Below, piece after piece: positions 1 through 44,369 of a DNA stretch of 64,000 nucleotides (the first letter of the stretch is position 1; each line of letters begins with the position of its first letter). The notes under the pieces were generated by a model. The model was not told where the DNA came from. It ran no database searches and saw only the letters and a program-made list of their open reading frames with translations. Position numbers and translations under genes: made by a program. The stretch is from the NCBI RefSeq assembly GCF_963921235.1, contig NC_086124.1, positions 15,562,001 through 15,626,000 on the forward strand. The letters are read 5' to 3'. This stretch comes from Mobula hypostoma (lineage: Eukaryota).

Positions 1-1053
1 ATGATAAAAACAGTAAGAGGGAAAAGATACATGTTGATGGTAATCGACAGATTCAGCAGATGGGTAGAGGCAGTACCCTCGAAAGATCAAGGGGCAGGAA
101 CAGTGGTGAAATTCCTGACAAACGAAGTGATCCCAAGGTTTGGGATACTGACGGAAATTAGCTCAGACAATGGTTCAGCTTTCATTCAAAAAGTGGTCAA
201 GTTAGTTCTGCGAGCATTGAGAATAAAGCAGAGATTTGGATGTGTGTATCACCCTCAGTCGCAGGGTATGGTGGAAAGAATTAACGGGACCTTAAAAACC
301 AAACTAAACAAAATCTGTGTAGATACTAAACTTAATTGGGTCGATGCACTACCATTAGCATTAATGAGTTACCGCATGCAGACTAATCGGATGACGTGTC
401 TAACACCGCATGAAATGCTAACCGGAAGGCCCATGCCAATGCCCCAGTGGAGAGGACCATATAAAGGGCCTAGTTTAGAACAACTGGAATTGGAATTAAA
501 ACAATACATGCGGCAATTGACTATGATGCATAAGTCTATTTATGTACAGGAAAAACAGAAAGAGCCAGAGATTGATCAAGGGGAAGGACCAATCAAGCCA
601 GGTGATCAGGTCTACATGTGAGCGTTTTGAAGAAAGTGGAACGAACCCAGCAGGGAAGGGCCCTTTATAGTAACCAAAGCATCACCCACCGCAGTTCAAG
701 TGGAAGGACGCTCCACCTAGTATCATCTCAATCACTGCACTAGAGCAGTCCCGCAGGTACAGTCAGGTGGGCCAGCCGAGGTAAGTGGTGAAGAGGAACA
801 AACAGTAGGGGGCAGGCAAGAGCAACAAGAAGCTGACACTGACCCGCAGGAACTTGACCGAGTAATAAGGGAAATTTTTGGTCCTGAGGACAGGCCCGAA
901 GATCCCAAGGACGAGGTTATGGATGGTAGTACTCTTTCAGATAATGGGGACGACTTGGGGGCGACCAGTCTCGCCCCCTGGGAGGATACACTCAGATACT
1001 CTTGTGCAGATTTGGAGATGATTAATTTGGCAGATGTGGCATGGGACTGTTAA
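1..1053 (+). pseudogene. pol: Endogenous retrovirus pol, integrase and C-terminal region (5' part outside window), disrupted
   Basis: DDE core VIDRFSRW / SSDNGSAF / HPQSQGMVER. The frame continues past in-frame stops at 619, 628 and 718 through a GPF module (REGPFIVTKASPTAVQVEG..YHLNHC) to TAA at 1051-1053. Confidence 0.9.
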
Positions 1054-2542
1054 GATTCCACCAAATCTGAGAGAAAGGAGTAAGAGGAGCACAATGGTTA
1101 CCTCCGTACCATGGTACCAGAACATGTGGTACCAATGGGCAAATTATACAGCAGGGATGATGAAGAGACAGAATTGTTATCTATGCTCAAGGGCAAGTCC
1201 AGTGCAATATGTAGTCCCCATGCCATACAACTCCTCCACCTGCACGCAATGGCGAAAGGAGCGGAGGGGGCAGTGTGTGCAGCAGTGTCCAAGTATAGTC
1301 AAGACCTGCAGTATGGGAATTTGTAGCGGGATAGATCCTTGTTATCGGAAATGTATTGATAACACACCAATGTGCCTTTATTGGTGTATTTTATACCAGG
1401 CTTCCTCGCAGTATGATCAAAACAAGCTTGCCTCTAACTGAAATTACAGCAGACCGTGGGCTATGAATAAAAGAAGCCAGACACCCACATTTGAAAAGCT
1501 CAAAGTGCAGGAGCATTTGAGTTATGAATGTTTCACATGGACGGGTGATCTCCAGGTTGGACATTTCAGTGGTAACTGTGCTGAGACTTGGGATGTAACC
1601 CCAGGCCAGAGATACAAGACAGGTACCCCTCCGCCCGATGGTGCACTGGATGCCCAGACCATCCCGTTAGCAGATACCCGGTGGCTCTGTGGGAAGGAGG
1701 GAGGTCTGAGATCCACGCTCCCCCTTGGTTGGACAGGTACAAGTACACGAGTTATGCTGATTCAAGAAGTTGTAGTATCCCCTGAAGTACAATTTGACAC
1801 TCTGAAGCAGCAGATACTGCGAATAAGGAAGAGAAAATATGAACCTGATCCAACAATCCAAATCGACAGTACAGGACAGCCGAGAGGTATACCTAATGAA
1901 ATTAAGACAAGAAATGAGATTGCTGTGGGCTGGGAGGCACTTACACCTATAACAGGGGTTAGTAAAAATGTTGAATGGATAAATTATATATATTATAATC
2001 AACAGAGATTCATTAACTACACTGATGATGCACTAGAGGCCTTGGGGCAGCAGCTAGATGCAACCAGTAGAGTGGCGTGGCAAAATAGACAGGTACTAGA
2101 CTGGCTATTGGCAGAGAAAGGAGGAGTTTGTGTAATGTTTGGGGAACAGTGCTGTACTTTTATACCGAATAGCACTAGTCCGGAGGGATCGTTTACCAGA
2201 GCAATGAATAAACTGAAAAATTTAAGAAAGGAAGTTAAACAAAATGCAGGGTTTGGACACCAGTTCTTTGACTGGTTAAATAGTAAACTAGGAGGATGGG
2301 CAGCATGGCTGACCAAGATTGCAGTAACCATTGGTATTGTATTACTAAGCTGTGCGGTCATTCTGTGCTGTTTTCTTCCATGCCTCAAGTCGCTTGTAGT
2401 GCGTGCTGCAATGAAACGGTTTCCGATGCTCCTGGAAATTGTTGGGTCGAGCCCTATGGAGAAGGAGGCACCGATGATGTATTCGTACAGTCTACGAGAC
2501 ATGCAAGACGAACAGGAGAGAGATGAGATATGTGGGGATTAG
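944..2542 (+). pseudogene. env: Gamma-type retroviral envelope (class I / epsilon-like ERV), interrupted by in-frame stops
   Basis: ORFs 1034-1441 and 1463-2542 share a frame and are separated by TGA 1439-1441. Motifs: CxxC (CYLC), furin site RIRKR, NVEWINYIYYNQQRF, ISD WQNRQVLDWLLAEKGGVC, CX6CC and a TM helix. Possible acceptor ctttcag at 934-940. The start position is uncertain. Confidence 0.88.
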
Positions 2543-7773: not shown

Positions 7774-10700
7774 ACCATAAGACCATATGATATGGGAGCA
7801 GAATTAGGCCATTTGGCCCATCGAGTTTGCTCCACCATTTCATCATGGCTGATCCACTTTTCCTCTCAGCCCCAATCTCCTGCTTCTCCCTGTATCCCTT
7901 CACGCCCTGACCTATCAACCTCTGCCTTAATTATACATAAAGACTTGGTCTCTACAGCTGCCTCTGGCAAAGAATTCCACAGATGCACCACCCTCTAGCT
8001 AAAGAAATTCCTCCTCATCTCCGTTCTAAAAAGGCGCCCCTGTATTCTGAGGCTGTGCCTTAGACTCTCTCACCATAGGAAACATCCTCTCCACATCCAC
8101 CCTATCAAGGCCTTTCTACATTCAATAGGTTTCATTAAAATTACTCCTCATTCTTCTGAATTCTAGTGAATACAGGCCATCAAACACTCTTCATATGACA
8201 AGCTGTTTAATCCTGGAATCATTTTCATGAATCTCCTATGCACCCTTTCCAGTTTCAGAACATCCTTTCTAAGATGCTTTCAAAACTGCTCACAATATTC
8301 CACGTGAGGCCTCACCAGTGCTTTATAAAGTCTCAACATTACATCCTTGCATATATTTTCCAGTCCTCTTGAAATAAATGCTGAAATCGCATTTGGCTGC
8401 TTCACCACAGACTCAACCCGCAAACCCTACACAAGGACTCCCAAGCCCCATTGTTCCCCAGTTTATTTTGTATTTTCTCTCCATTTATTAAAAAGTCAAC
8501 CCTTTCATTTTTTTCTACCAAAGTGCGTGACCATACACTTCCCAACACTATATTCCATCTGCCACTTTTTTCCCCATTCTCCTAAACTGTTTGTCCATCT
8601 GTAGCCTCTCAGCTTCCTCAAAGCTACCTGCCTCTCCACCTATCTTCATATTGTCTGCAAGCTTTGCAACGAAGCCATCAATTCCATCATCCAAATCATT
8701 GAAATACAATGTAAAAAGAATTGATCCCAAAACAGACCCCTGTGGAACACCAGCAGCCAAGCAGAAAAGATCCCCTTTATTCTCACTTTTTCCCCTGGCC
8801 AATCAGATGCTGCTTTTTCCATGCTAGAATCCTTCCTGTAATACCATGGGTTTGTAGCTTGTTAAGTAGCCTCATGTGTGGCACTTTGTCAAAGGCCTTC
8901 TGAAAATCCAAGTACACAACATCAACTGATTTCTCCTTTGTCTATCCTGCTTGTTGTTTCTTCAAAGAATTCCAACAGACTTGTCAGTCAAGATTTTCCC
9001 TTTTGTAAACCTTACTGACTATGATCTATTTTATCATCTGCCTCCAAGTACCCTAACCTCAGCCTTAAAAGTTGACTCCAACATCTTCCCAACCACTTAA
9101 GTTAGACTACCTGGCCTGTAGTTTCCTTTCTTCTGCCTTTCTTCCTCCTTAAAGAGTGCAGTGATATTTGCAATTTTCCAATCTTGCCGAACCAATCCAT
9201 AATCCAGTGATTCTTGGAAGATCATTACCAATACCTCCACAAACTCTTCAACCACCTCTTTCAGAACACTAGAGTGTACACAATCTGGTCCAGGTGATTT
9301 ATGTACCTTCAGACCTCTCAGTTTCCCAAGAACCTTCTCTCTAATAATGATAACTTCATCCACTTCATGACTGCTAACACCTGGAAATTCCAGCATACTG
9401 CTAGAGTGTTCCATAGTGAAGACATACAAAATACTTATTCAGTTCATCCGCCATTTCCTTGTCCCCCATTATTACTTTTCCAAATCATTTTCTAGTGGGC
9501 TGATATCCACTATCCTCTTTTACATGTTATGTGTCTGAAGAAACTTTTGGTATCCTCTTTAATATTACTGACTAGCTTACTTTCGTATTCCATCTTTACA
9601 TTCTTTTTTACTTTTTTAGTTGCCTTCTGTTGGTTTTTAAACATTTCTCAATCCTCTAACCTCCCAGTAATTTTGCTCTTTTATACGCCCTTTGTTTTTT
9701 ACATTGGCTTTGACTTCTCTTGTTAGCCATGATTGTGTCACCTTGCCTTTAGAATACTTTCTCCTCTTTGGGATGTATATATCCTGTGCCTTCTGAATTG
9801 CTTCCAGAAATTCCAGTTGTTGCTGCTCTGCCATCATCCCTGCCAGTGTTCTTTTCCCATCAATTCTGGCAACTCCTCTCGCATGCCTCTGTAATTCCCT
9901 TTACTCTACTGCATGTCCATAAACGTTCTTTTACCTTAAGCTCTCTAATCAATTCTGGTTCATTGCCGAACAGCCAACCCAGAATAGCTGATCTCCTAGT
10001 GGGTACAACTACAAGCTGCTCTAAAAAACCATCTCTCAGGCACTCTAGAAATCCCCCTTTCTGGAATCCAGCACCAAACTGATTTTCCCAATCTATCTGC
10101 ATATTGGAATCCACCATGACCATTGTAACATTGCCCTTCTGGCCTAAATTTTCTATCTCCTGTTGTAATTTGTAGGCCACATTCTTCCTACTCTTCGGGG
10201 GTCTGTATACAACTCCCATCAGGGTCTTTTTATCCTTGCAGTTCCTTAGCTCTATCTACAATGATTCAACACCTTCCAACCTTATGCTAGCTCTTTCTAA
10301 TGATTTGATTTCAATTTTTACCAACAGAGCAACGGTGTCACCCTGCCTTCCTGCCTGTCTTTTTGATATAATGTGTATCCTTGGACATTAAACACCCAGC
10401 TATAACCTCCTTTCAGCCATGATTCAGTGATGCCTACATCATCATATCTGCTAATCTGCAAATGTGCTACCAGTTCATCTTATTCTGTATGCTGCGCATT
10501 CAAATATAACACCTTCAGCCCTGTAATTCACCCTTTTCTATTTTGTCCACCTTTTACATTGGAACTCATCCTGTTAAATGCAATTTTGCCCTATCAACAG
10601 CCTCTTCTTACTTCAGATTGCCTTTGTCTGTAAACCAGCTACCCATCTTCAGTACTATCATCCGCCTTTCATATGATACTTCTGGCAGCTCAAGACACTA

Positions 10701-11379: not shown

Positions 11380-12135
11380 AATCTCTAGGGAATAAACCTA
11401 TTCAACCTTTCCCCATAACTCAGATTCTCAAATCCCAACAACATCATTATGCATTTTCTCTGCACTCTTTCAAGTTTATCATTACCTTTCCTGTAGGTAG
11501 GTGACTAGAACTGAACACAATACTCCCAGATTTGGCCTGACCAATATCTTATAAAGCTTCAATATATCCCAACTTCTTTACTCAATACTGTCATTTATTA
11601 AGCCCAATCTGCTAAGAGCTCTTTTTTTTAATGACACTATCTACATGTGATGCTACTTTAAAGACATTATGGATCTGTATTCCCATACTGATCTTCAAGT
11701 GGGCTAATTTTGTCTCTTGCTATGCATTTGCTCGTCTTCCAGAGCAAGCTCGTACTTTATTTAGTCCCTCTGAAGTGTTCCTTACTTCTTTTATCTCCTC
11801 AAGTGCATCACTTGTTCCTTGTTGCCTATTCTTGCAAAACACCTCCTCCTTTGTTAAAACAGGGTCGCAATATCTCTCGAAAACCTAAATTCCCTAAACC
11901 TTTTAGCCTTGCCTTTTATTCTAACAGGAGCATACAAACACATTACCCTCAATATTTCAGTTCTGAAGGCATCCCACTTAGCCAGCGTCCCTTTGCCAGA
12001 GAACAACCTATCCCAATAAACACGGGCCATTCCATTCTGATACCGTCCAAATTGGCCTTACTCTAATTTAGAACCTCAACCCGAGGACCAGTCCTATCCT
12101 TCTCCAAAACTGTCTTGAAACCAATGGAAATATGA
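11380..12135 (-). mobile_element. CR1 fragments (second subfamily)
   Basis: Similar to the CR1 copies at 35465-37570 and 41050-42625. Confidence 0.6.
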
Positions 12136-12169
12136 TCACGAGTGAACCGACACACTCATCTATCACCCC

Positions 12170-12361
12170 CGGGCCAAGGCCGCACCCCCACACCGTCCTG
12201 TTGCCACGGGAACGGCGTCAGTGACGTCGCGCACAAATGATCCTACGAAGCGCCCTCGCGTCACGTGACATCCAGTCCGCAGACCAGGAGGCGGAGCATA
12301 GTAGACTGTCAATCAGCGAGCCGCCGCTGGCAGTCACCCGTATACGGGGGCTTCGGTGAGG
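12170..12361 (+). promoter_or_regulatory. CpG-rich promoter-like island with a candidate first-exon splice donor
   Basis: RFX X-box-like GTTGCCACGGGAAC 12200-12213, CRE-like TGACGTC 12222-12228, palindromic E-box GTCACGTGAC 12260-12269, GC box 12287-12297, donor G|GTGAGG at 12356. Confidence 0.6.
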
Positions 12362-12459
12362 GAATTTGGCACCGGGGCAGAGAGGGCGATCATTTCAATT
12401 ACTGTATCCGTATATTGAAAAGAAAAATAATAGTTTAATTATGTTAAGATGATTCTTTT

Positions 12460-12730
12460 CAGAACATGTTTAGAACGGAGTTGAGGAAAAACTTTCACAC
12501 AGAGGGTTGTGGTTCTGTGATATGCTCTGTCTCAGAAGGCACTGGAGGACAATTTTCCGGATTCTTTCAAGAAAGAGTTAGATAAAGCTCTTCAAGGTAG
12601 CGGAGTCAAGGGATATGGGGAGAAGGCAGGAAAAGGGAAGTGATTGTGGATGATCAGCCATGATCACAGTGAATGGCAGTGCTGGCTCGAAGGGCTGAAT
12701 GGCCTACTCTGCACCTATTGTCTATTATCT
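12460..12730 (+). mobile_element. CR1 3' end fragment
   Basis: Typical 3' tail ...gctggctcgaagggctgaatggcctactctgcacctattgtc. Confidence 0.75.
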
Positions 12731-13009
12731 GAGTTTGATATAATCAGCTTAAAATGACGAGAGGATCGAAAACAAATTGAAACGCTGGAAATTTGAAACT
12801 AAAGCAGAGAAACTCAGCAGCTCAGGAAGCATCTATGGAAAAGAGTAAACTGTCGACGTTTTGGGACCCTTCAAAAGCAACCTCGCTGTAATTTGCAAAA
12901 AAGAATGGTGGAGAGATCGATGGAATTAAATGAATAGCAGTATAAACCGAAGCCAGGGGAAATAGGTCAATGGGGACAGAGAGATGGTGAATAAGATTAT
13001 CATATTTAT

Positions 13010-13110
13010 ATAGTCCTGACGAAGGGTCTCGGCCTGAAACGTCGACTGCACCTCTTCCTGGAGATGCTGCCTGGCCTGCTGCATTCACCAGCAACTTTGA
13101 TGTGTGTTGC
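13010..13110 (+). mobile_element. Short Penelope-like non-autonomous insertion flanked by a 13-bp TSD
   Basis: TTATCATATTTAT at 12997-13009 and 13111-13123. Paralogous blocks near 26815 and 61760 lack the insert. Confidence 0.75.
13011..13048 (+). ncRNA. Minimal type I hammerhead ribozyme motif
   Basis: Stem I tagtc/gactg, core CTGACGA, stem II agggtctcggcct, GAAAC, then GTC cleavage triplet (predicted cut after 13043). Confidence 0.7.
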
Positions 13111-13987
13111 TTATCATATTTATCTTGTTTACATGTTCCTAAATAGCAGAGATTCATTTAATCCCACTTTCACGGAATGTTACAACACTATAACAGGCCA
13201 TTTGGCCCTTCACATCTATATCAACTACAAAGAGCCCATCCATATTAATTCCTTCTTCCAGCACTTAGCCTGGCAATTCAAGTGTTTGATGAGACATTTC
13301 TGAAATCCCATCAGTAACACTGCTTTCACTGCTGTCTCTGGTACTCCAGGTACTAACTATTGTCTGGGCAAACAGGTCCTCCTCAGATCCTCTTTCAACC
13401 TCTGACCCCCTCAACCTAACCCCATGTCCAGCAGTTTCATCCACTCATGATATGGGGAAAAGCTCTCTGCAACCTATCCTATCTCTACCCCTCCTCATAA
13501 TTTTCTATACCTAAATCACCTCCCCTCATTAGCAGGGTATACTACTGTGTACTGGGTCCAATTTTAATTGTCATCTATGTCAATGATCTGGATGATAATA
13601 TTATAAAATGGATCAACAAATTTGAGAATGGCACCATGATTGGGGTGTAGTGGACAACAAGGAAGGCCATTGAAGCTTGCAGTGTGATCTGGGAATACAG
13701 ACCCATTATTCCTTGAAAGTGCTGTCACAGGTAGCAAGGAATGTAAAGAGAGCTGTAGGCATATTGGCCTTCATAAATCAAAACAATGAGTACAGGAGTT
13801 GGGGTGTTATGTTGAAGTTGTAAAATTCATTAATGAGGTCAAGTTTGGAGTATTGTGTACAGTTCTGGCCACCTATCTACAGCTAACTGTCTGTCCCAGA
13901 AAATGTTTGAAACTGTAACCACAGAGAGAATAAATGCACATTTCCAAAATTTCCAACAATCAGGCAAAGTGAAGAGGGTTTTGTGAA

Positions 13988-16410
13988 ATGGGAGATAGAA
14001 AATGCATGCCAAAAGGGCAATGTTACAATAGTCATGAGGGATTTCAATATGCAGGCAGAGTGGGGAAATCAGATTGGTGCTGGTTTACAGGAGGTTGAAT
14101 TTCTAAAGTACATAGCTCATGGTTGAGCCTGCTATGGGATCAGCTATTCTGGATTGGGGGTTATGCCATGAACCAGAACTGATTTGAGATTTAAAGTAAA
14201 AGAACCCTTGGGGCAAGTGATCATAATATGAACAAATTCACCCTGAAATTTGAGTAGGAAAAGCTGAAGTCAGATATATCAGTATTACAGTGGAGTAAAG
14301 AGAGTTACAGAGGCATGGCTATAATTGATTGGGGAAAAAAAAACACTGGCAGGAATGATGGCAAAGCAGCAATGGCTGCAATTTCTGAAAGCAATTCAGA
14401 AGGCACAAGGTATATAAACTCTGAGGAGGAAGAAGAATTCTAAAAGAAAGACGACACAACCATAGCTAACAAGAGAAGTCAAAATCACCATCAAACCCGA
14501 AGAGAGGGCAAAATTTAGAGGGAAGTTAGAGGATTGGGAAGCTTTTAAAAACCAACAGAAGGCAACAAAAAAAATCATTAAGGTAAAGATGAAATATGAA
14601 AATATGCTAGCCAATAACATTAAGGAGGATACCAAAAGTTTCTTCAGATACATAAAGTGGAAAGTAGAGGCGACAGATATCAGGTCGCTGGAAAACAATG
14701 CTGGAGAGGTAGTAATAAGGGAAAAATAAATAGCAGTCAAACTGAGTAAATATTTTTCATCAGTCTTCACTGTTGAAGACTCTTGCAGTACGGTGGAAGT
14801 TCCAGGTGTCATGAAGTGTGCGAATTTACCTAAACTGAGAGAAGGTTCTTAGGAAACTGTAAGATCTGAAGGTTGATAAGTCACCTGGACCAGATGGTGC
14901 ACACCCCAGTGTTCGGAAAGAGGCATGAGTAATGACCTTTCAAGAATCACTAGATTCTGGAAGACTGGAAGATTCCAAATGTCACTCCACTCTTCAAGAA
15001 GGGAGAGAGGCAGAAGAAAGGAACCCATAGGCCAGTTACTTTGACCTCAGTGAAGATGTTGGAGTCGATTTTTAAGGATGAGGTGTCAGGGTACTTGGAG
15101 GCACATGATAAAATAGGTTGTAGTCAGTAAGGTTTCCCCAAGGGAAAATCTTGCCTGACAAATCTGTTGGAATTCTTTGAAGAAATAACAAGCAGGATAG
15201 ACAAAGGAGAATTGGTTGATGTTGTGTACTTGGATTTTCAAAAAGCATTTGGCAAAGTGCTACACATGATGCTGCTTAACAAGCTATGAATTCATGGTAG
15301 CACAGGAAAAATTCTGGCATAGATAAAGCAGTGTCTGATTGGCCGGGGGAAAGAGCGGGAATAAAGGGAGTCTTTTCTGCTTGGCTGCTGGTGTTCCACA
15401 GGGGTCTGTTTTGGGATCAATTCTTTTTACATTGTATTTCAATGATTTGGATGATGAAATTGATGGCTTTGTTGCAAAGCTTGCAGACAATATGAAGATA
15501 GGTGGAGAGGCAGGTAGGCTTGAGGAAGTTGAGAGGCTACAGATGGACAGACAGATTAGGAGAATGGGCAAAGAAATGGCAGATGGAATACAGCGTTGGG
15601 AAGTGTATGGTCATGCACTTTGGCAGAAGAAAATGAAAGAATTTACTTTTTAATAAGTGGAGTAAAAATACAAAAAAACTGAGGTGCAAGGGGACTTGGG
15701 AGTCCTTGTGCAGGATTCCCTCTCAAAGTTAATGTGGAGGTTGAATCTGTGGTGAGGAAAACAAATGTGGTGTTAGCATTCATTTCAAGAGGACTGGAAT
15801 ATAAAAGCAAGGATGCAATGTTGAAATGTTACAAAACACTGGTGAGGCCTCACTTGGTGTACTGTGAGCTGTTTTGGGCCCCTTAACTTAGAAAAGATGT
15901 GTTGAAACTGGAGAGGTTTCAAAGGAGGTTCACAAAAGTGATTCCAGGATTGAATGGTTTGTTATATGAAGAACATTGGATGGCTCTGGGCCTGTATTCA
16001 CTAGAATTCAGAATCATGAAGGACGACCTCATTGAAACCTATCAAATAGTGAAAGGTGTTGACAAAGTGGACATGAAGAGGATGTTTCCTGTGGAGGGAG
16101 AACCTAAGACCAGAGGACACAGCCTCAGAATAAATGGGTGTCCTTTTATAATGGAGAAGAGGAGGAATTTCTTGAGCCAGTGAGTGGTGAATCAGTGGAA
16201 TTCTTTGCCACAGGCAGCTGTGGAGACTAAGTCTTCATGGATAATTAAGACAGAGTTGATAGATTCTTGATTGGTCAGGGCATGTAGGGAGACAATGAGA
16301 AGGCAGGACATTAGGGCTGAGAGGAAAACTGGATCAGCCATGATGAAATGACAGAGCAGAACTGATGGGCCAAATGGCCTACTTCTGCTCCTATATCTTA
16401 AGGTCTTATG
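13988..16410 (+). mobile_element. CR1 LINE, 5'-truncated, degenerate ORF2 plus 3' tail
   Basis: Endonuclease and RT motifs ([15 protein letters not shown]). An empty site is visible in the paralogous block at about 60930-60945 (minus strand). Confidence 0.88.
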
Positions 16411-16794
16411 AAGTGATTTCACATTTAACAAATACATTTGAATCTTCAAATAGTAGGAGCATAAGCTGTGGGTTGCACTGAACTGAGACGTCCATTTGTT
16501 AAGCTGCTCTTTCACAGCTCACTGATCTCTGAACTTACTGGTGACAAAGAGAGATAGGAACTTAAGTAGTGAAGATGGGGGAAGGAGGGGATATTATGGG
16601 AGGAAGTGAGATTGTACATTTCGGCAGGAAAAATATACAATAAATCATGTTCTCTAAATGCTGAGAGATAGCAGGTCGTTTTCTGATAAAGAGGCTTTGG
16701 CTTGAAATGTTTACTCTGTTTCTCAGTCTTCAGTTGCTGCGTTTTACTTAAATTTCAGAACTCTGGTCTTCACGTTCGTTCTTTTTCCAGAGGA

Positions 16795-17050
16795 ACATTC
16801 GTTTAGAACAGAGATGAGGAGGAATTTCTTTAGCCAGAGGGTGGTGAATCTACAGAATTCACTGCCACGGATGGCTGTGGACGCCAAGTTCTTGCGTATA
16901 TTTAAAGTGGAGGTTGATAGGTTCTTGATTAGTCGGTTCTTCAAAGATAATAGGGAGAATGGGTTGAGAGGGATAATAAATCAACTATGATGGAATGGGG
17001 GAGAAGATCAACGGGTTGAATGGCCTAATTCTTCTCCTATATCTGATGAT
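16795..17050 (+). mobile_element. CR1 3' end fragment
   Basis: Matches the 3' ends of other CR1 copies. Confidence 0.75.
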
Positions 17051-17377
17051 TTGGTGTTAATTTTCGGAAAATTGTGTACAAATCTGAAGAGGTTTTGCGT
17101 CAGTTATCGGGGGTGGGGGTGGGGGTTAGGTAGTAACGTTACAGTTTGTATTCCGTTGTGGCTAAACCGTTGAAAAGTCGCGGTTACTAATCTGGTAAAA
17201 TAAGAGACCATTCTCTGCTTGGCCATCCCTCTGACTCTGTCTGCACCTCTTCCCGCCCCGCCTCTCTCTCTCTCGCACAGTCTGTCTCCACCCCCCTCCC
17301 GCCCGTCACTCTCTCTGCGCATAGTCCGTCACTTTGTCTCCGCCCCTTCCCGCCTCTCTAGATTTCTGCGCCGTTCT

Positions 17378-17404
17378 CGGGCAGGTCGGGGCGCTGTGTA
17401 TAAA
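17378..17404 (+). promoter_or_regulatory. H4 core promoter (GGTC element plus TATA)
   Basis: gggcaggtcggggcgctgtgtataaa is conserved upstream of all three H4 genes (also at about 31180 and 62030). Confidence 0.7.
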
Positions 17405-17451
17405 CGGAGTCAGCAACAGTCTTCGTCAGTGAGCAACAGCGTCTGTGGTGA

Positions 17452-17772
<321 letters not shown>

Positions 17773-17801
17773 GGAACTCCTGATTCTGAACACAACACAA
17801 A

Positions 17802-17843
17802 GGCTCTTTTAAGAGCCACCCACCACCTCACAGAGAGAGCAGT
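17802..17843 (+). terminator. Histone 3' stem-loop plus HDE (H4)
   Basis: GGCTCT-TTTA-AGAGCC, ACCCA, then cagagagagcag. Confidence 0.95.
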
Positions 17844-18714
17844 GACCCGGAGCAGAAATAGATGCCTTTGGAATAATTTATCGGTGAAACAAACCTTGTG
17901 CTTGTCCGTAGTTTATTTTAAGCGAATCCCTTACGTTACAGAAGAGGTATAGATGATGGTTGATAGTGAAAATTACCAAAGTGACGAGGTATTTATAGAC
18001 AGGTGAATTGAGCGGTACAAGCTATATGCGAGCGTAGGGAGTTAATCTAAATCGGCATCATGGACGGGGCAAACATGGGTCAAAAGTCTGCTCCCCTGCA
18101 TTACACTGTTCTATTCAAATCGGCATCAACCCACATTTAGCAGTCTCCCGCAGAAAACCTCAGCTCCGAAACGATTCAGTAAACTCGGCTTGTTTAGAAA
18201 ATAAATACAGCAATTTTAATTAAAAGGTTTGGATAACTCCCTCAAAAACCATTCCCTGTGACAATGATATGTTTGGGTTATTCGAAATGGAAAAAGCAGC
18301 CTACCATTTCGGACTGGCTGAATGTCAGACCAGCCAGTCACACACATCTGTACCTGGGCAAAGATGATGCCAACTCACCCGTCGTGGTTGTTCTGGAAGG
18401 GGCGGCTGTTTGAATTCGACAGCAGATATGAAGCCGATCGCAGTGCTGGGGCTCTGTAATAGACACGGCCAGGACGGACATTCACTTCCAACAGTCGGCG
18501 GAGAACCCAGCCTCGACATTTCAGACTGAGCACCCACCGTTAACCCTTTCGTTTTGCACTAGTAAGGAATTTCAATGGACCCTGCCTGCTAGTTGGTACA
18601 ATCTAATCCGAACCTTTGCCCCGCGCTCATAGAATCCGCACAGTAGCTCTTTCACAGACTCTGTGAGCGGCTCTGAAAAGAGCCTTTGGGTCACTGGGTT
18701 CAGATTCTGTGTCT

Positions 18715-19263
<549 letters not shown>

Positions 19264-19624
19264 TCAAGAAACAGTAGCAGAGGCGTGGAAAATAACCTTT
19301 TACTCCCCTAAAATGAACTGAAATTTGACACAGCCCGCCAAAATCTTTGTTTAAACCTCATCTGAAATGAAGTCTTTCCAGTTCTATTTATCGACTACGC
19401 ATTCACCCATTACTGAAGTCAGCCACATTTAATATAAGTGTAGCTATTATTGTAACAGTGTCTGGCTATTTAATTCGCCGACTTCTTTCAACGGATGAAC
19501 GTTCAGAATAAAAATCGATTCTCAGCTTCTGTTCGCGGTCATTGCATGAACGGCATCGGTTTATGAATGAGTTGCTCTTTTCAAACTGCGACTTGACTTT
19601 AGTCTACAGTTTTCCTAATGTAAA

Positions 19625-20490
19625 GAGAGACAGGGAAGTTAAAGCTAAGGAGAGGGCATATAATAGAGCAAAAAACAGCGGGAAGTTACAAGATTGGAAA
19701 GCTTTAAAGAACAACAGAAGGGAACCGAATCCATAGAGGTGGAACCCTAAAATGGGATTGCCAAAAATCCTGAAGAGGATACCAAAAGTTTCTTCAGATA
19801 TATAAAGAGTAAAAGAGAAGCTGACGGTGACTAGTGGTGTTTCTTGGGGATCTGTGTTTGGACTGCTTTCCTTTATGTTATATGTCAATGATTTGAATGA
19901 TGGAATTGATCGCTTTGTGCCAAGTTTGTGGATGATACAAAGGTAGGTGGAGGGGCGAGTAGTGTTGCAGAAGCAGAGAGTCTGCCGAAGGATTTAGACA
20001 GATTAGGAGAATGGGCAAGGAAGTGGCAGATGGAGTACAGCGTCAGGAAGTCTTTGGTTGTGAACTTTGGTAGAAGAAGTAAAAGCATAACCTATTTCTA
20101 AATGGGAGAAAATTCAAAAATCGGAGATGCAGAGGGACTTGGGAATCATCGTGCAGGATTCCCTAACGATTAATTTGCAGCTTGAGTCGGTGGCGAGGAA
20201 GACTTTATAAGGAATCGGTAAGGCCTCACTTGGAGTGCAGTGAGCAGTTGTGGGACCATTATCAAAGAAAAGATGTGCTGATATCGTAGAAGTTTCAAAG
20301 GAGATTCAAAAAATAATAATAATTCTGGGATAGAAAGGCTTCCAGTATGAAGAGCATTTGAAGTCTCTGAGCCTCGACTTACTGGAATTCAGAAGAATGA
20401 GTAAACCTCATTGAAAATATCAAATGTTAAAAGGCCTTGATAGAGTGAATATGAGGAGCAAGTTTCCTCTGGCGGGGGAGTATAAGACTA
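19625..20490 (+). mobile_element. CR1 fragments (duplicated at 33365-34230)
   Basis: RT remnants; near-identical to the second copy. Confidence 0.8.
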
Positions 20491-20655
20491 GCTGAAGCCC
20501 GTTTGAGTATCTGAAGGGACCGCTGCTCGGATTCTGGTTGTACTTCATCCCTGTGCTCCTCATACATGGGCACCCAGCGAGGAGGATCTACTGGTGCGCT
20601 TGCTCCTGGGCCAATCAAGAAACAGTACCCAGAAGTGCAGAAAATAACCCTTTTG

Positions 20656-21435
20656 TAAATGAGGTTTCGGAAGCAAGGATCAGATGGGTCTATTGAGGAT
20701 TATAGGGTAGCAAGAAAGGAGCTTAAGAAGGGGCTGAGAAGAGCAAGAAGGGGGCATGAGAAGGCCTTGGCAAATAGGGTAACAGAAAACCCCAAGGCAT
20801 TCTTCAACTATATGAAGAACAAAAGGATGACAGGAGTGAAGTTAGGACAGATTAGAGATAAAGGTGAGAAGATGTGCTTGGTAGCTGCGGAAGTGAGCGA
20901 GGTCCTCAATGAATACTTCTCTTCGGTATTCACCAATGAGAGGGAACTTGATGACGGTGAGGTTGATGTTCTGGAGCATGTTGATGTTAAGGGAGAGGAG
21001 GTGTTGGAGTTGTTAAAATACATTAGGACGGGTAAGTCCCCAGGGCGTGATGGAATATTCCCCAGGCTGCTCCAAGAAGCGAGGGAAGAGAATTTTGAGC
21101 CTCTGGCTAGGATCTTCATGTCCTCATTGTCCACTGGAACAATACTGGAGGATTGGAGGGAGGCGAATGTTGTCCCCTTGTTCAAAAAAGATAGTAGGGA
21201 TAGTCCGGGTAATTATACACCAGTGAGCCTTACGTCTGTGGTGGGAAAGCTGTGGGAAAAGATTCTTAGAGATAGGATCTCTGGGCATTTAGAGAATCAT
21301 GGTCTGATCAGGGACAGTCAGCATGGTTTTGTGAAGGGCAGATCATGTCTGAAAAGCCTGATAGTGTCCTTTGAGGAGGTGACCAGGTATATAGATGAGG
21401 GTAGAGCAGTGGATGTGATCTATATGGATTTTAGT
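20656..21435 (+). mobile_element. CR1 ORF2 segment (young subfamily)
   Basis: Open 272-codon frame with KSPGRDGI, SQHGFVKGRSC and VDVIYMDFS. Confidence 0.9.
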
Positions 21436-23410
21436 ACCCTCTGTACCCTTTCCAATGTTTCCACATCCTTCCTGTAGTGAGGAAGCCAGAACTGGACACA
21501 GTATTACAAGTGTGGCCTAACCAGAGTTTTATAGAGTTGCTTCATTACCTCATGACTCTTAAACTCTATCCCTCAACTTATGAAAGTTAACACCCCATAA
21601 GCTTTCTTAACTACCCTATCTACCTGTGAGGCAACTTTCAGGGATCTGTGGACATGTACCCCCAGATCCCTCTGCACCTCCACACTACCAAGTATCCTGC
21701 CATTTACTTTGTACTCTGCCTTGGAGTTCGTCCTTCCAAAGTATACCACCTCACACTTCTCCGGGTTGAACTCCATCTGCCACTTCTCAGCCCACTTCTG
21801 CATCCTATCAATGTCTCTCCGCAATATTTGACAATCCTCTACACTATCTACAACACCACCAACCTTTGTGTCATTTGCAAGCTTGCCAACCCACCCTTCT
21901 ACCCCCACATCCAGGTTGTTAATAAAAATCACAAAAAGTAGAGGTCCCAGAACAGAGCCTTGTGGGACACCACTAGTCACAACCCTCCAATCCGAATGTA
22001 CTCCCTCCATCACGACCCTCAGCTTTCTGCAGGCAAGTCAGTTCTGAATCCACCTGGCAAACTTCCCTGGATCCCATGCCTTCTGACTTTCTGAATAGGC
22101 CTACCGTGTGGAACCTTGTCAAATGCCTTACTAAAATACATGTAGATCACATCCAGTGCACTACCCTCATCTATATGCCTGGTCACCTCCTCAAAGAACT
22201 CTATCAGGCTTGTTAGACATGATCTGCCCTTCACAAAGCCATGCTGACTGTCCCTGATCAGACCATGATTCTCTAAATGCCCAGAGATCCTATTTCTAAG
22301 AATCTTTTCCAACAGCTTTCCCACCACAGACGTAAGGCTCACTGGTCTATAATTACCCGGACTATCCGTACTACCTTTTTTGAACAAGGGAACAACATTC
22401 GCCTCCCTCCAATCCTCCGGTACCATTCCCATGGACAACGAGGACAAAAAGATTCTAGCCAGAGGCTCAGCAATCTCTTCCCTCGCCTCGTGGAGCAGCC
22501 TGGGGAATATTCCGTCAGACCTCGGGGACTTATCCGTCCTAATATATTTTAACAACTCCAACACCTTCTCTCCCTTAATATCATCATGCTCCAGAACATC
22601 AACCTCACTCATATTGTCCTCACCATCAAGTTCCCTCTCATTGGTGAATACCGAAGAGAAGTGTTCATTGAGGACCTCGATCACTTCCACAGCCTCCAGG
22701 CACATCTTCCCACCTTTATCTCTAATCTGTCCTACCTTCACTCCTGTCATCCTTTTGTTCTTCACATAATTGAAAAATGCCTTGGGGTTTTCCTTTACCC
22801 TACTTGCCAAGGCCTTCTCATGCCCCCTTCTTGCTCTCCTCAGCCCCTTCTTAAGCTCCTTTCTTGCTTTCCTATATTCCTCAATAGACCCATCTGATCC
22901 TTCTTCCTAAACCTCATGTATGCTGCCTTCTTCTACCTGACTAGATTTTCCACCTCACTTGTCACCCATGGTTCCTTCATCCCACCCTTCTTTATCTTCC
23001 TCACCAGGACAAATTTATCCCTAACATCCTGCAACAGATCCCTAAACATTGACCACATAGCCATAGTACCTTTCCCTGCAAAAACATCATCCCAGTTCAC
23101 ACCCGCAAATTCTAGCCTTATAGCCTCCTAATTTGCCCTTCCCCAATTAAAAATTTTCCTGTCCTCTCTGATTCTATCCTTTTCCATGATAATGCTAAAG
23201 GCCAGGGAGCGGTGGTCACTGTCCCCCAGATGCTCACCCACTGAGAGATCCGTGACCTGACTCGGTTTGTTAACTAGTACTAGATCTAGTATGGCGCTCC
23301 CCCTAGTCGGCCTGTCAACATACTATGACAGGAATCTGTCCTGGACACACTTAAACTCTGCCCTGTCTAAACCCTTGGAAATAATCTGGTGCCAATCAAT
23401 ATTAGAGCAG
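21436..23410 (-). mobile_element. CR1 ORF2 segment, inverted relative to 20656-21435
   Basis: ORFs 22019-22810 and 21573-22013 carry RT motifs ([21 protein letters not shown]). Confidence 0.9.
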
Positions 23411-23689
23411 TTAGGGAATGAGCTGCCAGAAACACTGGTTGAGGCAGGCACCTGAGCAACCTTTTAAAAACCGACTTGAGAAGAGCAACCCATCCGTAAG
23501 CTGATGTGTTTCCACAAAGAACCAGAAATTCTTAAAGTCTGTCGTGGAACAATTAATTTACATTCTGTATGGACAGAAGTGGAGTAGTCATGCAGGGAAT
23601 CCGTGTTCATACAGAGATCTGTAATTGATTTATATTGTAGACCATTTATTTATTTATTGGTGGGCTTTTCAAATTTCAGAGTTTTTGGT

Positions 23690-24040
23690 GACTGACTGTT
23701 ATTTTCCGCGCTTCTCTTGCTGCCGCTGATCATTGGAGAACCGGACAGCTCGCTCATTCGGTTATTCCAGATAACCAATCTGAGAAAGCGTTGCACCACC
23801 AATCGTAAGTACCCTTCCTCATTCCCCCAGAAGCTAGAAAAAGGGTGAATCCGGAAGCTTTCGCCATTCTTTGTGAAGGACTTTGCAAGAGTGAGTGAAT
23901 GAGGAAAAGCAGGTGGTAAGGCGAAGAGCGGTGTGCCGGGCAGGACTGTGGTTCCAGGTGGGCCGTGTTCACAGGTTCATGAGAAAGGGAAATTAATGAG
24001 GAAATTCTCTTGGGCTCGCCCCGGTACTTTCTGGAGCAAT
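23690..24040 (+). pseudogene. H2A: Decayed H2A promoter and 5' coding fragment
   Basis: CCAAT boxes, then a ccggaagctttcgccattct leader like the H2A genes, then gccgggcaggactg..gtgggccgtgttcacagg..agaaagggaaat..gccccggt, with indels. No 3' half. Confidence 0.7.
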
Positions 24041-24707
24041 ACAGGTGACAAAAATAAATTCTCCAACTAACTTCAGCCCCCACAATATGCAAATGCCGCC
24101 AAGATTATAATTGTATCCATTAATCAAAAATAAAAATAGATGTATGAACAGGATTTCACCGTCAGATTCCACACTCATTTACGATAAAGACCGTGTGTGG
24201 ATTCGTCACATAAAAGAGATTTAATGTTGCCCCACTTCCCAAATCCACTTGTAATCTATTGGAATAAAGGCTGATTCACAGAATGCAACCAATTTAGTCC
24301 AATATGTAGACGCATCAGCTTGTCGTCGTGTCACCACTGAAAAACTGCAGTCGGAGCAGAGTCTGTCGGTTCTGTGAAAGGACTCGAGTGAATCTATTGT
24401 GATCGCAGGTTGAAATACAATTCAAGCCATTTATAACACGGGTGTATTCACAGTAACAGCTAACATCTTCACTTCAATCCGCTCTAGGTGTAAAACTTTG
24501 TGTGAAAACTGAGTGAGCAAAATTTCCGCGTTTGGGCGCGAACGGCATTGTAGAGCAATGAAAGAATACGCAACATAAAAATTAATGTAATTACATCTAA
24601 TGCCAGGCTTGTAGCGATCCAATATAGAATTATTAGTACAACTCTTTAACCGAAACTGTGAGTGGCTCTTAAAAGAGCCGTTGGGTTTTTCTTAGTACTC
24701 AGTCGCT

Positions 24708-25079
24708 TCACTTGGAACTAGTGTACTTGGTCACCGCTTTGGTTCCTTCCGACACAGCGTGCTTGGCCAGTTCTCCGGGCAGCAGCAGGCGCACGGCGGT
24801 CTGGATCTCCCGAGAAGTGATGGTCGATCGTTTGTTGTAATGAGCCAGGCGGGAAGCCTCCCCAGCGATGCGCTCGAAAATGTCGTTCACGAACGAGTTC
24901 ATGATGCTCATGGCCTTGGAGGAGATGCCGGTGTCAGGGTGAACTTGCTTCATTACCTTATAAACGTAAATGGAATAAGTCTCCCTCCTCGCCCTCCTGC
25001 GTTTCTTGCCAGCCTTGCCTTGCGCTTTGGACACGGCTTTCTTGGCGCCCTTCTTGGAAGACTTCGACGGCTCAGGCAT
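24708..25079 (-). CDS. H2B: Histone H2B (divergent N-tail type)
   Basis: 123-aa ORF, stem-loop 24664-24679, TATTTAAA, octamer-like ATTAGCAT at 25158-25165, CCAAT boxes. Confidence 0.97.
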
Positions 25080-26312: not shown

Positions 26313-26329
26313 TGCAGGAGGCAAAGAGT

Positions 26330-28097: not shown

Positions 28098-28216
28098 GAA
28101 AATCGGTAGATGCCGGAAATCCAAGCAAAGCACACAAAGTACTGGAGGAACTCAGCAGGCCAAGCAGCATCGGTGGAAAAATGCTGCCTAGCCTGCTGTT
28201 CCTCCAGCATTTTGTG
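28098..28216. repeat. Palindromic Penelope-like short element (same family as 13010-13110)
   Basis: Arms 28133-28170 and 28181-28216 are inverted copies. Confidence 0.7.
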
Positions 28217-28493
28217 AGCTATGTGGGAGTGAAATTCACCGATTTCTCTACTCAGAACAAGTGTTCATTCTCAGTTGCAGTCCTCGGTCGGTCATTGTGT
28301 GAATTGCATATGAACGAGTTGCTTTTCTCAAACTACGACTGAAGTTTAGTCTGCAATTTTAACGAATTATTTGTAAAAGAACCGTCTGGCATTGAAATGG
28401 GATTCAGGGAATAAGAAATACAGCTCTGTTAATGAAATATTGAGTGGCTCTTAAAAGAGCCTTTGGGTTTTCGGTTTGTTTTGGCAGCACTCT

Positions 28494-29855: not shown

Positions 29856-29879
29856 TAATAGAAAATGAAATATTGCAAT

Positions 29880-31249: not shown

Positions 31250-31570
<321 letters not shown>

Positions 31571-42625: not shown

Positions 42626-42959
42626 ATGTTCACAGAATTAATGTTGTAAAGCTAACATAAAACTCCCAACTATACATATATCAATATGCTAAATAATATT
42701 ATCCATCAATTTTGCAAGTTCCTTGAACTAAGCAATTTAAGAGTCAGCTTGTCTATCGCAATAATAAAACAGATGTAGTGACATTGCGTCTGCTTTTCAG
42801 GGACAGAGTGTCTGTGCTTTATACAGATCTTGTTTGCAAAGCTGGTCTACAAAATGTTTTTGAAACTTCAAGCTGATTACTGCTTTCTATTGCTATCTTA
42901 AGAACTGAAGACAGACTTCCATTTATGACCAGAAACTAAACAAAGCAAAATAGTTGAAA

Positions 42960-43178
42960 CGTAAACACGAGGAAATCTGCAGATGCTGGAATTTTAAGCA
43001 ACACACTTAAAAGTTGCTGGTGAACGCAGCAGGCCAGGCAGCATCTCTAGGAAGAGGTACAGTCGACGTTTCGGGCCAAGAGCTTTCGAAGGGTCTCGGA
43101 CCGAAACGTCGACTGTACCTCTTCCTAGAGATGCTGCCTGGCCTGCTGAGTTCACCAGCAACTTTTAAGTGTGTTGCT
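42960..43178. repeat. TSD-flanked 182-bp palindrome made of head-to-head Penelope-like units
   Basis: Inverted arms span 42997-43178, centred on ttc|gaa. Flanks are CAAAATAGTTGAAA (42946-42959) and CAAAACAGTTGAAA (43179-43192). Confidence 0.85.
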
Positions 43179-44369
43179 CAAAACAGTTGAAAATCTATTT
43201 TGGATCTTATATTGACAGATGTTGTGCTTAGAAGGCAAGGTTAACAAAAAAACCAAGGAGGAGGCTGACTACTGTTGAAGTGAATATTCATGAGTTATGG
43301 GCAAAGTTTGGACAGGCTAGAACATTTTACCTTGGCGTGTAGGAATTGCAGTTTGACTTTACAAAGATGTATTTAATAATAAAAGCCTAGATGGGTGAGT
43401 GCACACAGTCTTTTTCCCCAACAAGAGGGAATCAAAATCAAAGGATATAGATTTCAGGTGAAAGTGACTGATGCTGATACAGTATCAGTATTTAAAAGAC
43501 AGATTATCAGTTGGTGGATTGAGAAGGGCAAGACAAATATGGCCAAGACAGGAAAATTGAATTGGATTAGATAGTCATCTTGGTCGGAATGGACCAGTGA
43601 GCCCTGCATTACCTTCTGGTTATCCAGCAGCATCCCATCTGACAAACTGTTTATAACACCCACACTCACTTACTAAATGTATATTTAGAAAGAAATCTCA
43701 CTATAAAATGTTTCGTCTTTCACTGATAAACTTTCTTTTTTATGTTGTTCTTTTCAAATAATCCTCCCTCGGTAAAAATGTCTATTTTCCTTCCTCAATT
43801 AAGGACTTTACATTGAAATGTCTCTTGGTGATGCCCAACTTTTTTTGCGCAGCCATTTGAGAGATGATGTCATAGAAGCTTGCTGTTACTGACATTATTC
43901 TCTCAATGAAGCGCTGATGTGAGCACGGGATGGCAGCAAGGCCCATTGTGAGGGTGGCAGCGACAGAACTGAATGGGGCAAGTCTGTACTTGCTACAGTT
44001 TCAAAGATGAGAGGTGATATAATGGGGTTTGCAGGTTGGCGTGGAGATTTAGAAGCCAACGACTGAATCAGACGTATTGCACTTTGCTCTCCTCTGTTGG
44101 CAATTGGATACAGGAGCAGATTGGTGGAGACTGGTGGGTCTGACTGCTCCACCACTGTGGGCATTGGCTTCTTCTCATTCTTTCTGCCGCCCAGGGAACT
44201 GTGAGTGCCTTACTGCTCTGGCTCCCTACCTCAGGTTTCACATCCTTGGGCTCACATACTCCTTGGATGTCACCCACCACTCCCTCTGTAACCTCCTCCC
44301 ATGCTGGAAAACTCCCATATCTCTGCCCTCTTTCATATCCTCACATTACTGTTTATAGATTGGTGGCAT

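What the first reader, a model, noticed from the sequence alone, without database searches (positions are those of the whole stretch)
13010..13110. A 101-bp mobile unit that is essentially a hammerhead ribozyme plus a tail
Seen: tagtc-CTGACGA-agggtctcggcct-GAAAC-GTC-gactg. This gives stem I (tagtc/gactg), an intact CUGANGA box, stem II, GAAA, a palindromic ACGU in place of stem III, and a GUC cleavage triplet. The unit sits between perfect 13-bp direct repeats and is absent from two paralogous blocks (near 26815 and 61760). Known: Penelope-like elements carry minimal type I hammerheads with a vestigial palindromic stem III that cleave as dimers. Inference: this is a non-autonomous, ribozyme-bearing retroelement family mobilised in trans, easily mistaken for a SINE. 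I cannot tell whether this family has already been characterised.
Basis: partly seen in the sequence, partly recalled or inferred. Interest (0 to 1): 0.8.

Follow-up and report, generated by a model that had tools for sequence, protein, structure and literature searches.

The report
Truncated Penelope retrotransposon end with hammerhead
This 101-base insertion is the cut-short tail end of a Penelope-like jumping gene, carrying that family's known miniature "hammerhead" self-cutting RNA motif; it is a real but ordinary, probably dead, copy of a hugely abundant repeat in this ray genome, not a new kind of mobile element.

Summary
A 101-bp insert (13010-13110, + strand) lies between perfect 13-bp target-site duplications. 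Two paralogous histone-cluster blocks are empty sites. Its 5' third fits a minimal type-I hammerhead with no helix III: one hit in the window and none in 300 shuffles. Rfam finds no hammerhead, even at E<=10.

The discrete SINE-like reading is not supported. Other copies in the window have different 5' ends. Two are spacer-less head-to-head fold-backs. One arm carries a 38-nt 3' extension that the other lacks. These are published hallmarks of Penelope-like element (PLE) integration: heavy 5' truncation, inverted partner copies and an optional one-sided 30-40-bp tail.

Contigs from three species hold 14,000-33,000 matching pieces each. Hundreds of contigs per run continue upstream of 13011-13012 with shared sequence. 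Others continue past 13112 with the same tail.

Best reading: a 5'-truncated, tailless PLE 3' end. As an isolated monomer its hammerhead is predicted inactive. Cleavage is untested.

Earlier notes of this scan flagged similar units elsewhere in this genome. Low interest; new member of a known kind.

The parts
12997..13009 (.). Left copy of the target-site duplication, TTATCATATTTAT.
   Evidence: It is a perfect 13/13 match to 13111-13123, and the paralogous block at 61.7 kb holds a single copy.
13010..13110 (+). The inserted unit: a 5'-truncated, tailless 3' terminus of a Penelope-like element. The boundary may extend to 13112.
13011..13048 (+). Minimal type-I hammerhead motif: helix I (13011-15 with 13044-48), CUGACGA (13016-22), bulged A (13023), helix II GGGU-CUCG-GCCU (13024-35), GAAA (13036-39), the C-G palindromic dinucleotide (13040-41) and UC (13042-43). 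The predicted cut is after 13043.
   Evidence: one descriptor hit in the window and none in 300 shuffles; the MFE structure forms helices I and II; the published architecture.
13063..13081 (+). GATGCTGCCTGGCCTGCTG, a block shared by all copies and subfamilies seen.
   Evidence: In one search, the loose ends behind 13048 rejoin at this block.
13091..13110 (+). 3'-terminal hairpin GCAAC-N10-GUUGC, at the point where tailless copies end. I infer it to be the internal start site of reverse transcription.
   Evidence: -6.4 kcal/mol; no common variants in 13084-13110. The analogy is to the stem-loop RT start site of the anole element in PMC11167929.
13111..13123 (.). Right copy of the target-site duplication.
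42946..43192 (.). A second insertion of the same family. The layout is a 14-nt TSD (42946-59 and 43179-92, 13/14), a 38-nt tail (42960-42997, minus strand), an inverted arm (42998-43087, minus strand) and a direct arm (43088-43177, plus strand). Both arms are cut inside the CUGANGA box.
   Evidence: 96-nt arms, 94% complementary, 0 nt between them.
28125..28226 (.). A third, older fold-back insertion of a related subfamily. Its arms are only about 50-60 nt of the tail region and carry no hammerhead.
12784..12885 (-). A fourth, old and decayed single copy of a related subfamily, with a degenerate core.
   Evidence: (nhmmer E=3e-20).

Best explanation
The 101 bp is a dead-on-arrival, heavily 5'-truncated copy of the 3' end of a Penelope-like retrotransposon (PLE).

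Inferred mechanism, following the published PLE model:

1. The element's GIY-YIG endonuclease made staggered nicks about 11-13 bp apart in an AT-rich target.
2. Its reverse transcriptase started at the inner of two internal start sites near the 3' end of the element's RNA. This gives the tailless end at the GCAAC...GUUGC hairpin.
3. It copied about 100 nt and stopped. Repair then produced the 13-bp duplication.

The piece copied happens to include the PLE's resident minimal type-I hammerhead. That motif lacks helix III and can reach an active fold only by pairing its ACGU palindrome with a second copy, that is, in tandem or dimeric transcripts of the parent element.

At this locus there is one copy. 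It has no partner on the same strand and no transcript detected across the locus in the one probable RNA run examined, so the ribozyme is most likely a passenger fossil here.

Shown: the insertion, the TSD, the empty sites, the motif, the variable 5' ends, the fold-backs, the one-sided tail, the very large family and the longer copies.

Inferred: the enzyme responsible, the RT start site and the ribozyme's inactivity.
For: - Insertion, TSD and empty sites.
- The motif is non-random and of PLE type: one search gives 1 hit against 0 in 300 shuffles. The architecture matches PMC4209133 in having no helix III, a palindromic 15.2-16.2, a bulged nucleotide after A9 and a 5-bp helix I.
- Variable 5' ends among four insertions in one window.
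- Spacer-less inverted 5'-truncated partner copies at 43k and 28k.
- A 38-nt extension on one arm only at 43k. The same extension, GAATTTCCAGCATCTGCAG..., forms the loose end behind 13112 in 132-251 contigs in each of the three DNA runs and 38 in the probable RNA run.
- These three features are exactly those listed for PLE insertions in PMC8557442. The tail is explained by two internal RT start sites in PMC11167929.
- Copies longer than this one exist. Loose ends before 13011 and 13012 have a partly conserved consensus that recurs in all four runs, 153-561 contigs per run in the DNA runs.
- Family size: 30,525, 33,174 and 14,341 contigs at 80% likeness or more in three species.
- Monomer inactivity: the MFE pairs core GACG with CGUC. 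ACGU/ACGU is worth only -1.7 kcal/mol, against -7.5 for the competing GUCGAC palindrome.
- No depth in the probable RNA run on the unique flanks 12900-12998 and 13131-13163; only trace depth further out on the right flank.
Against: - No full-length element with an RT/GIY-YIG ORF could be fetched, so the link to an autonomous PLE rests on structural hallmarks and the motif type.
- The summed k-mer depth drops about 3-fold only in the first 10 nt of the unit, having been nearly flat across the other 90 nt. This could mean that many copies share a 5' end near the hammerhead rather than truncating at random. Contig data cannot settle it.
- The 10.1-11.1 pair is G.U (or A-U in the other register), not the G-C reported as highly conserved in PLE min-HHRs. 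The family majority carries the same letters.
- Preferential conservation of the whole hammerhead relative to the rest of the unit is not shown: 3/38 against 7/63 variable positions, p=0.74.
Confidence: 0.75

Rival explanations
1. The roughly 100-nt hammerhead-plus-tail module, alone or as a fold-back, is a discrete non-autonomous retroelement. It would be a SINE-equivalent or monomeric retrozyme, transcribed on its own and copied in trans by PLE reverse transcriptase, and that would explain its very high copy number.
For: - The family is very large and dominated by short pieces.
- K-mer depth is nearly flat over 13021-13097 and falls only in the first 10 nt.
- The module contains the presumed RT entry site at its 3' end.
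- Unchecked notes from this scan report similar 104-124-bp units with 13-bp TSDs elsewhere in the genome.
- Published work holds that animal retrozymes are non-autonomous PLE derivatives and that promoters lie in pLTRs.
Against: - The 5' ends differ among all four insertions in this window.
- Hundreds of contigs per run continue upstream with shared sequence.
- There is no tRNA, 7SL or 5S-type head and no tandem arrangement here.
- Head-to-tail joints are rare among contigs, at depth 13-46 against millions.
- Fold-backs and one-sided tails are by-products of PLE integration, not signs of an independent unit.
Confidence: 0.2
2. The hammerhead resemblance is a chance match inside an ordinary repeat, and the RNA has no ribozyme history.
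For: - Rfam has no hammerhead match, even at E<=10.
- The unit as a whole folds no better than shuffles, z=+0.69.
- The 10.1-11.1 pair is non-canonical.
- The active dimer contact is weak.
Against: - The descriptor gives 0 hits in 300 shuffles of 64 kb.
- The motif sits in exactly the element type (a PLE terminus) where such min-HHRs are universal.
- Features not needed by chance are all present: the bulged nucleotide, the palindromic 15.2-16.2 and the 5-bp helix I.
- No common variants occur in CUGACGA, helix II or GAAA across tens of thousands of contigs.
Confidence: 0.04

Closest known systems
Minimal (dimer-dependent) type-I hammerheads of Penelope-like elements (Cervera & de la Pena 2014, PMC4209133; Lunse, Weinberg & Breaker 2017, cited via PMC6765202).
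   Same: - It has CUGANGA and GAAA boxes in type-I order.
- It has no helix III hairpin, and positions 15.2-16.2 are palindromic.
- There is an unpaired nucleotide between A9 and 10.1.
- Helix I is short, at 5 bp.
- The motifs are dispersed mostly as single copies in a vertebrate genome that holds PLEs.
   Different: - Helix II is only 4 bp and closes with G.U at 10.1-11.1 instead of G-C.
- N7 is C.
- A GUCGAC palindrome overlaps the cleavage site and competes with the ACGU contact.
- Activity is untested.
5'-truncated, inverted and tailed PLE insertions (Evgen'ev & Arkhipova 2005 and Arkhipova 2006, as summarised in Craig et al. 2021, PMC8557442; mechanism in Frangieh et al. 2024, PMC11167929).
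   Same: - There is heavy 5' truncation.
- An adjacent inverted 5'-truncated copy is present in the 43k and 28k insertions.
- An optional 30-40-bp tail sits at one end only; here it is 38 nt.
- A TSD is present.
- The hammerhead lies about 70-105 nt upstream of the insertion's 3' end. This is broadly similar to the anole Poseidon element, where RT starts 111-118 bp downstream of the ORF start at helix II.
   Different: The parent element and its clade (Poseidon or Neptune) are not identified here, and the copy at 13k is extreme in length, at about 100 bp.
Non-LTR retrozymes (Cervera & de la Pena 2020, PMC7229834; Li, Clavereau & Pollet 2026 preprint, 10.64898/2026.07.22.740005).
   Same: They are short, non-coding, hammerhead-bearing sequences related to PLE pLTRs, and solo 'monomer' copies of them are dispersed through vertebrate genomes.
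   Different: Retrozymes are defined by head-to-tail tandem repeats with canonical type-I hammerheads and circular RNA products. This unit is single, its hammerhead lacks helix III, and no tandem was found at the locus.
Schistosome Sm-alpha/Sj-alpha SINE-like elements with hammerheads (cited in PMC6765202).
   Same: They are short interspersed retroposons that carry a type-I hammerhead.
   Different: Those have a pol-III-type head and a canonical hammerhead with helix III. Here no such head was found, and the 5' end is not fixed.

Membership tests
PLE minimal type-I hammerhead | CUGANGA and GAAA boxes in type-I order with a UH cleavage dinucleotide. | tested here: met
   CUGACGA at 13016-22, GAAA at 13036-39 and UC at 13042-43.
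PLE minimal type-I hammerhead | No helix III hairpin, with palindromic positions 15.2-16.2 so that helix III forms only between two copies. | tested here: met
   C13040-G13041 with a 0-nt loop, giving the ACGU palindrome.
PLE minimal type-I hammerhead | An unpaired nucleotide between A9 and 10.1. | tested here: met
   the MFE register leaves A13023 unpaired before helix II (13024-27 with 13032-35).
PLE minimal type-I hammerhead | A conserved G10.1-C11.1 pair. | tested here: not met
   G13024 faces U13035, a G.U wobble. The alternative register gives A-U. One search lists no common variant at these positions, so the family majority is the same.
PLE minimal type-I hammerhead | A short helix I of 4-5 bp. 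| tested here: met
   5 bp including one G.U.
PLE minimal type-I hammerhead | Consensus families with compensatory changes in the helices. | tested here: inconclusive
   Only four copies are readable in the window. One search shows no common variants in 13010-13040, but the whole motif against the rest of the unit gives p=0.74.
PLE minimal type-I hammerhead | Location in the pLTR of an element encoding RT plus a GIY-YIG endonuclease. | not testable with these tools
   There is no PLE ORF in the window. The metagenome scan gave only chance hits.
PLE minimal type-I hammerhead | Site-specific self-cleavage as a dimer. | not testable with these tools
   This needs in-vitro transcription. Thermodynamics does not favour the active fold.
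5'-truncated PLE insertion | Variable 5' truncation with a common 3' end. | tested here: met
   four insertions have different 5' ends; longer copies exist.
5'-truncated PLE insertion | An adjacent inverted 5'-truncated copy in a share of insertions. | tested here: met
   43k has 96-nt arms, 94% complementary, with 0 spacer; 28k.
5'-truncated PLE insertion | An optional 30-40-bp tail at only one end. | tested here: met
   38 nt on the 43k left arm only; the same extension appears in 132-251 contigs per DNA run and 38 in the probable RNA run, and it is absent from the 13k copy.
SINE | An internal pol-III promoter head derived from tRNA, 7SL or 5S. | tested here: not met
   One search finds no tRNA. 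Searches find no 7SL, 5S or tRNA-like Rfam match at E<=10.
SINE | A fixed 5' end and unit length across copies. | tested here: not met
   One caveat is that the depth drop near 13010-13020 is unexplained.
Non-LTR retrozyme | Head-to-tail tandem repeats of the hammerhead-bearing unit. | tested here: not met
   One search finds no tandem at 12000-14000. One search shows only rare 'goes back' joints among contigs.
Rfam hammerhead families (type I, II, III, HH9, HH10) | A covariance-model match. | tested here: not met
   Searches (gathering score; E<=10) give no hammerhead hit. This is expected, since those models include helix III.

The most novel reading that the evidence does not exclude
In this ray lineage the roughly 100-nt hammerhead-plus-RT-entry-site module, alone or as a ~240-bp fold-back, has become a self-sufficient template that PLE reverse transcriptase copies in trans. 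It would be a SINE-equivalent for Penelope elements, with a 5' end set just upstream of the ribozyme, and that would account for the very large number of copies.
Probability: 0.15. Interest if true: 0.5.

Novelty: new member of a known kind. Interest (0 to 1): 0.22.

Why it matters
Mostly as annotation hygiene. In ray and shark genomes these roughly 100-bp pieces are extremely numerous and carry an intact-looking ribozyme core, so they can be mistaken for SINEs or for functional ribozyme genes. Recognising them as truncated Penelope termini avoids that mistake.

The family offers a very large natural sample of one min-HHR variant, with G.U at 10.1-11.1 and a competing GUCGAC palindrome over the cleavage site. 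It could be used to ask whether PLE hammerheads are under selection at all. That question is still open: published in-vitro work found that hammerhead mutants do not impair PLE insertion.

Tried and rejected
1. **Rfam/Infernal** on the whole window and, permissively, on 12950-13170 gave no hammerhead. This does not count against a min-HHR, because the Rfam models require helix III.
2. **Link to an autonomous PLE inside the window.** The RT-bearing ORFs at 20.6-22.8 kb have motifs typical of CR1/L2-type LINEs by my reading, and Pfam reports RVT_1 only, with no GIY-YIG. Other LINE-like RT fragments lie at 9.1, 15.3, 36.1 and 41.6-42.5 kb.
4. **Pattern scan of public metagenome contigs** for the ribozyme 3' half plus the tail block. 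It returned 120 loci, and none matched the element's profile HMM. The pattern was too permissive, and the hits are chance matches in unrelated contigs.
5. **Full-text search for the element's sequence strings.** This turned up only unrelated primer coincidences.
6. **An ORF starting in the hammerhead, as in the anole element.** The one open frame through the unit closes at the first codon of the tail consensus, so I dropped this idea.
7. **Preferential conservation of the hammerhead.** This is not demonstrable from the variants (p=0.74 for the motif against the rest). The p=0.004 contrast between 13010-13040 and the spacer is a post-hoc partition and is confounded by subfamily structure.
8. 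**Lunse et al. 2017.** The paper is not held in the library, so it is cited only through the 2019 review.

Full report
**What is there**

The window is a histone-gene cluster, with nine histone 3' stem-loops. I did not verify the species. The window's exact H2B protein is on record only in two NCBI assemblies.

- At 13010-13110 a 101-bp insert lies between two perfect copies of TTATCATATTTAT, at 12997-13009 and 13111-13123.
The 61.7-kb block has a single 'atcatatttatc' (A1). The repeats are therefore a target-site duplication, and the insert arrived after the blocks duplicated.
- Contigs of a second species bridge both junctions (X5 records 25 and 32), so the insertion is shared by two species labels.

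**The hammerhead motif**

- Helix I is uAGUC paired with GACUg, 5 bp with one G.U.
- The boxes are CUGACGA and GAAA.
- A C-G dinucleotide with no loop makes ACGU a palindrome, and it is followed by U-C. The predicted cut is therefore between 13043 and 13044.
- I scanned both strands of the window with a relaxed descriptor. It required CUGANGA, 9-24 nt holding at least 3 bp of helix II with an optional 5' bulge, GAAA, a Watson-Crick 15.2-16.2 dinucleotide, UH, and at least 4 bp of helix I. It hits only this site and nothing in 300 dinucleotide-preserving shuffles.
- Rfam finds no hammerhead at the gathering score or at E<=10. This is expected, because the Rfam models include helix III.

ViennaRNA chooses this register. 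[quoted passage not shown] One published feature is not met: the 10.1-11.1 pair is G.U rather than G-C.

**The unit is not discrete**

A profile search of the window finds three more insertions of the family.

| Insertion | Coordinates | Form | 5' end | Other features |
|---|---|---|---|---|
| This one | 13010-13110 | Single | 6 nt upstream of the CUGANGA box | Tailless, 13-bp TSD |
| 43k | 42946-43192 | Spacer-less fold-back; 96-nt arms, 94% complementary | Both arms cut inside the CUGANGA box | 14-nt TSD (13/14); the left arm alone carries 38 extra nt after the common 3' end |
| 28k | about 28125-28226 | Fold-back, arms about 50-60 nt | Within the tail region; no hammerhead | Older, related subfamily |
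| 12.8k | 12784-12885 (-) | Single | Not resolved | Old and decayed |

So 5' ends vary, inverted partners are common, and a 38-nt tail is optional and one-sided.

Craig et al. 2021 describe exactly this for PLEs. [quoted passage not shown] Frangieh et al. 2024 explain the tail as the stretch between two internal reverse-transcription start sites in the element's RNA (PMC11167929).

The 13k copy ends at a GCAAC-N10-GUUGC hairpin (-6.4 kcal/mol). I infer that this marks the inner start site.

**Genome-wide view (contigs laid at 80% likeness or more)**

- Contigs matching the unit number 30,525, 33,174 and 14,341 in DNA runs of three species labels, and 2,151 in a probable RNA run.
- Summed k-mer depth on the unit is in the millions, against about 20 on the unique flanks. 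The tool warns that this is not a copy number, but the family is plainly enormous.
- Loose ends before 13011 (...CTCTTACTATCTCTTCTTTCAGT) and before 13012 (...CATCTTCCCCCTTCCTTTCC) have partly conserved consensus sequences that recur in all four runs. Many copies are therefore longer on the 5' side than this one.
- Loose ends behind 13112 read GAATTTCCAGCATCTGCAG..., the same tail seen on the 43k left arm.
- This copy differs from the family majority at two positions, 13060 and 13083. With its perfect TSD, it looks fairly young.
- The probable RNA run has no depth on the unique flanks next to the insert (12900-12998 and 13131-13163) and only trace depth further out. I see no sign that this locus is transcribed across the insert.

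**Is the ribozyme functional here?**

- As a monomer the RNA folds into a rod. Helices I and II form, but the core GACG pairs with CGUC, which is an inactive state.
- The only way to build helix III is the intermolecular ACGU/ACGU contact, worth -1.7 kcal/mol. A competing GUCGAC palindrome over the cleavage site is worth -7.5 kcal/mol.
- This agrees with published work. Single min-HHRs show no cleavage, dimers cleave poorly, hammerhead mutants do not impair PLE insertion in vitro, and no RNA-seq ends map to the site.
- A solitary copy with no same-strand partner is therefore most likely a passenger fossil.

- Among positions with an alternative letter at 10% or more in any run, none falls in 13010-13040 (helix I 5' strand, CUGACGA, helix II, GAAA). 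Ten fall in 13041-13083, and none in 13084-13110.
- The three that touch the motif (G16.2, C17, G1.1) are CpG transitions at 5-15%.
- Taken as a whole, the motif is not significantly less variable than the rest of the unit, at 3/38 against 7/63 (p=0.74). Only a post-hoc partition gives p=0.004. I call this inconclusive.

**What I could not do**

I could not tie the sequence to an RT/GIY-YIG ORF.

- The window's RT fragments look LINE-type: Pfam RVT_1 only, with motifs I read as CR1/L2-like.
- A metagenome pattern scan returned only chance hits.

There is also one loose thread. K-mer depth is nearly flat over 13021-13097 but drops about three-fold in 13010-13020. That might mean many copies end near the 5' half of the hammerhead, as the 43k arms do. 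Contigs cannot give a length distribution, so a discrete short non-autonomous unit is not excluded. I give that about 0.15-0.2.

**Comparison and novelty**

- The motif works like, and by most defining features belongs to, the PLE minimal hammerheads of 2014 and 2017.
- The insertion belongs to the well-described class of truncated, inverted and tailed PLE copies.
- It is not a SINE: it has no pol-III head and no fixed 5' end.
- It is not a retrozyme as defined: there is no tandem and no canonical helix III.
- The idea that hammerhead-bearing short elements are PLE derivatives is itself published (PMC7229834; the 2026 preprint).
- Earlier notes of this scan flagged the same kind of unit elsewhere in this genome. 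I used them as leads and re-tested the architecture on this window's own copies.

**Verdict**

The claim of a new mobile unit is not supported. This is a new member of a known kind, of low interest.

Noticed in passing
window 42946-43192: A spacer-less fold-back of two copies of the same element: 96-nt arms, 94% complementary, a 14-nt TSD and a 38-nt tail on the left arm only. Both arms are cut inside the CUGANGA box, so neither has a complete hammerhead.
   Followed up: yes
window 28125-28226: An older head-to-head pair of a related subfamily (...TTCCTCCAGCATTTTGTG...). Its arms are only about 50-60 nt. Both arms seem to carry a decayed tail-like extension, which differs from the one-sided tail at 43k.
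   Followed up: partly
window 13041-13046: A GUCGAC palindrome overlaps G16.2 through position 1.3 of the hammerhead. It is kept in all four readable copies. It would compete strongly (-7.5 against -1.7 kcal/mol) with the ACGU contact needed for the active dimer. I do not know whether this is a regulatory feature or an accident.
   Followed up: partly
window 13010-13020 (depth table): Summed k-mer depth of the family falls about three-fold in the first 10 nt of the unit, while it is nearly flat across the remaining 90 nt. This hints at a preferred 5' end near the 5' half of the hammerhead. Contig data cannot resolve it.
   Followed up: no
window 1-2542: Endogenous-retrovirus remnants. One ORF has an integrase core domain (1-621). 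A 359-aa ORF (1463-2542) matches the C-terminal part of the TLV_coat envelope family.
   Followed up: no
window 20659-22810: Two convergent LINE reverse-transcriptase fragments of the same family, with motifs I read as CR1/L2-like, one on the + strand and one on the - strand. Further LINE-like RT pieces lie at 9097-9429, 15339-15653, 36112-36507 and 41644-42537.
   Followed up: partly
window 52013-53269: An open 418-aa ORF made almost wholly of C2H2 zinc fingers (14 matched stretches), lying inside the histone cluster.
   Followed up: no
window 27220-27708 (-) and 18925-19263 (-): Decayed or truncated H2A copies lie next to intact H2A genes at 32454-33002, 57906-58457 and 63086-63637. The cluster mixes live and dead histone paralogs.
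   Followed up: no
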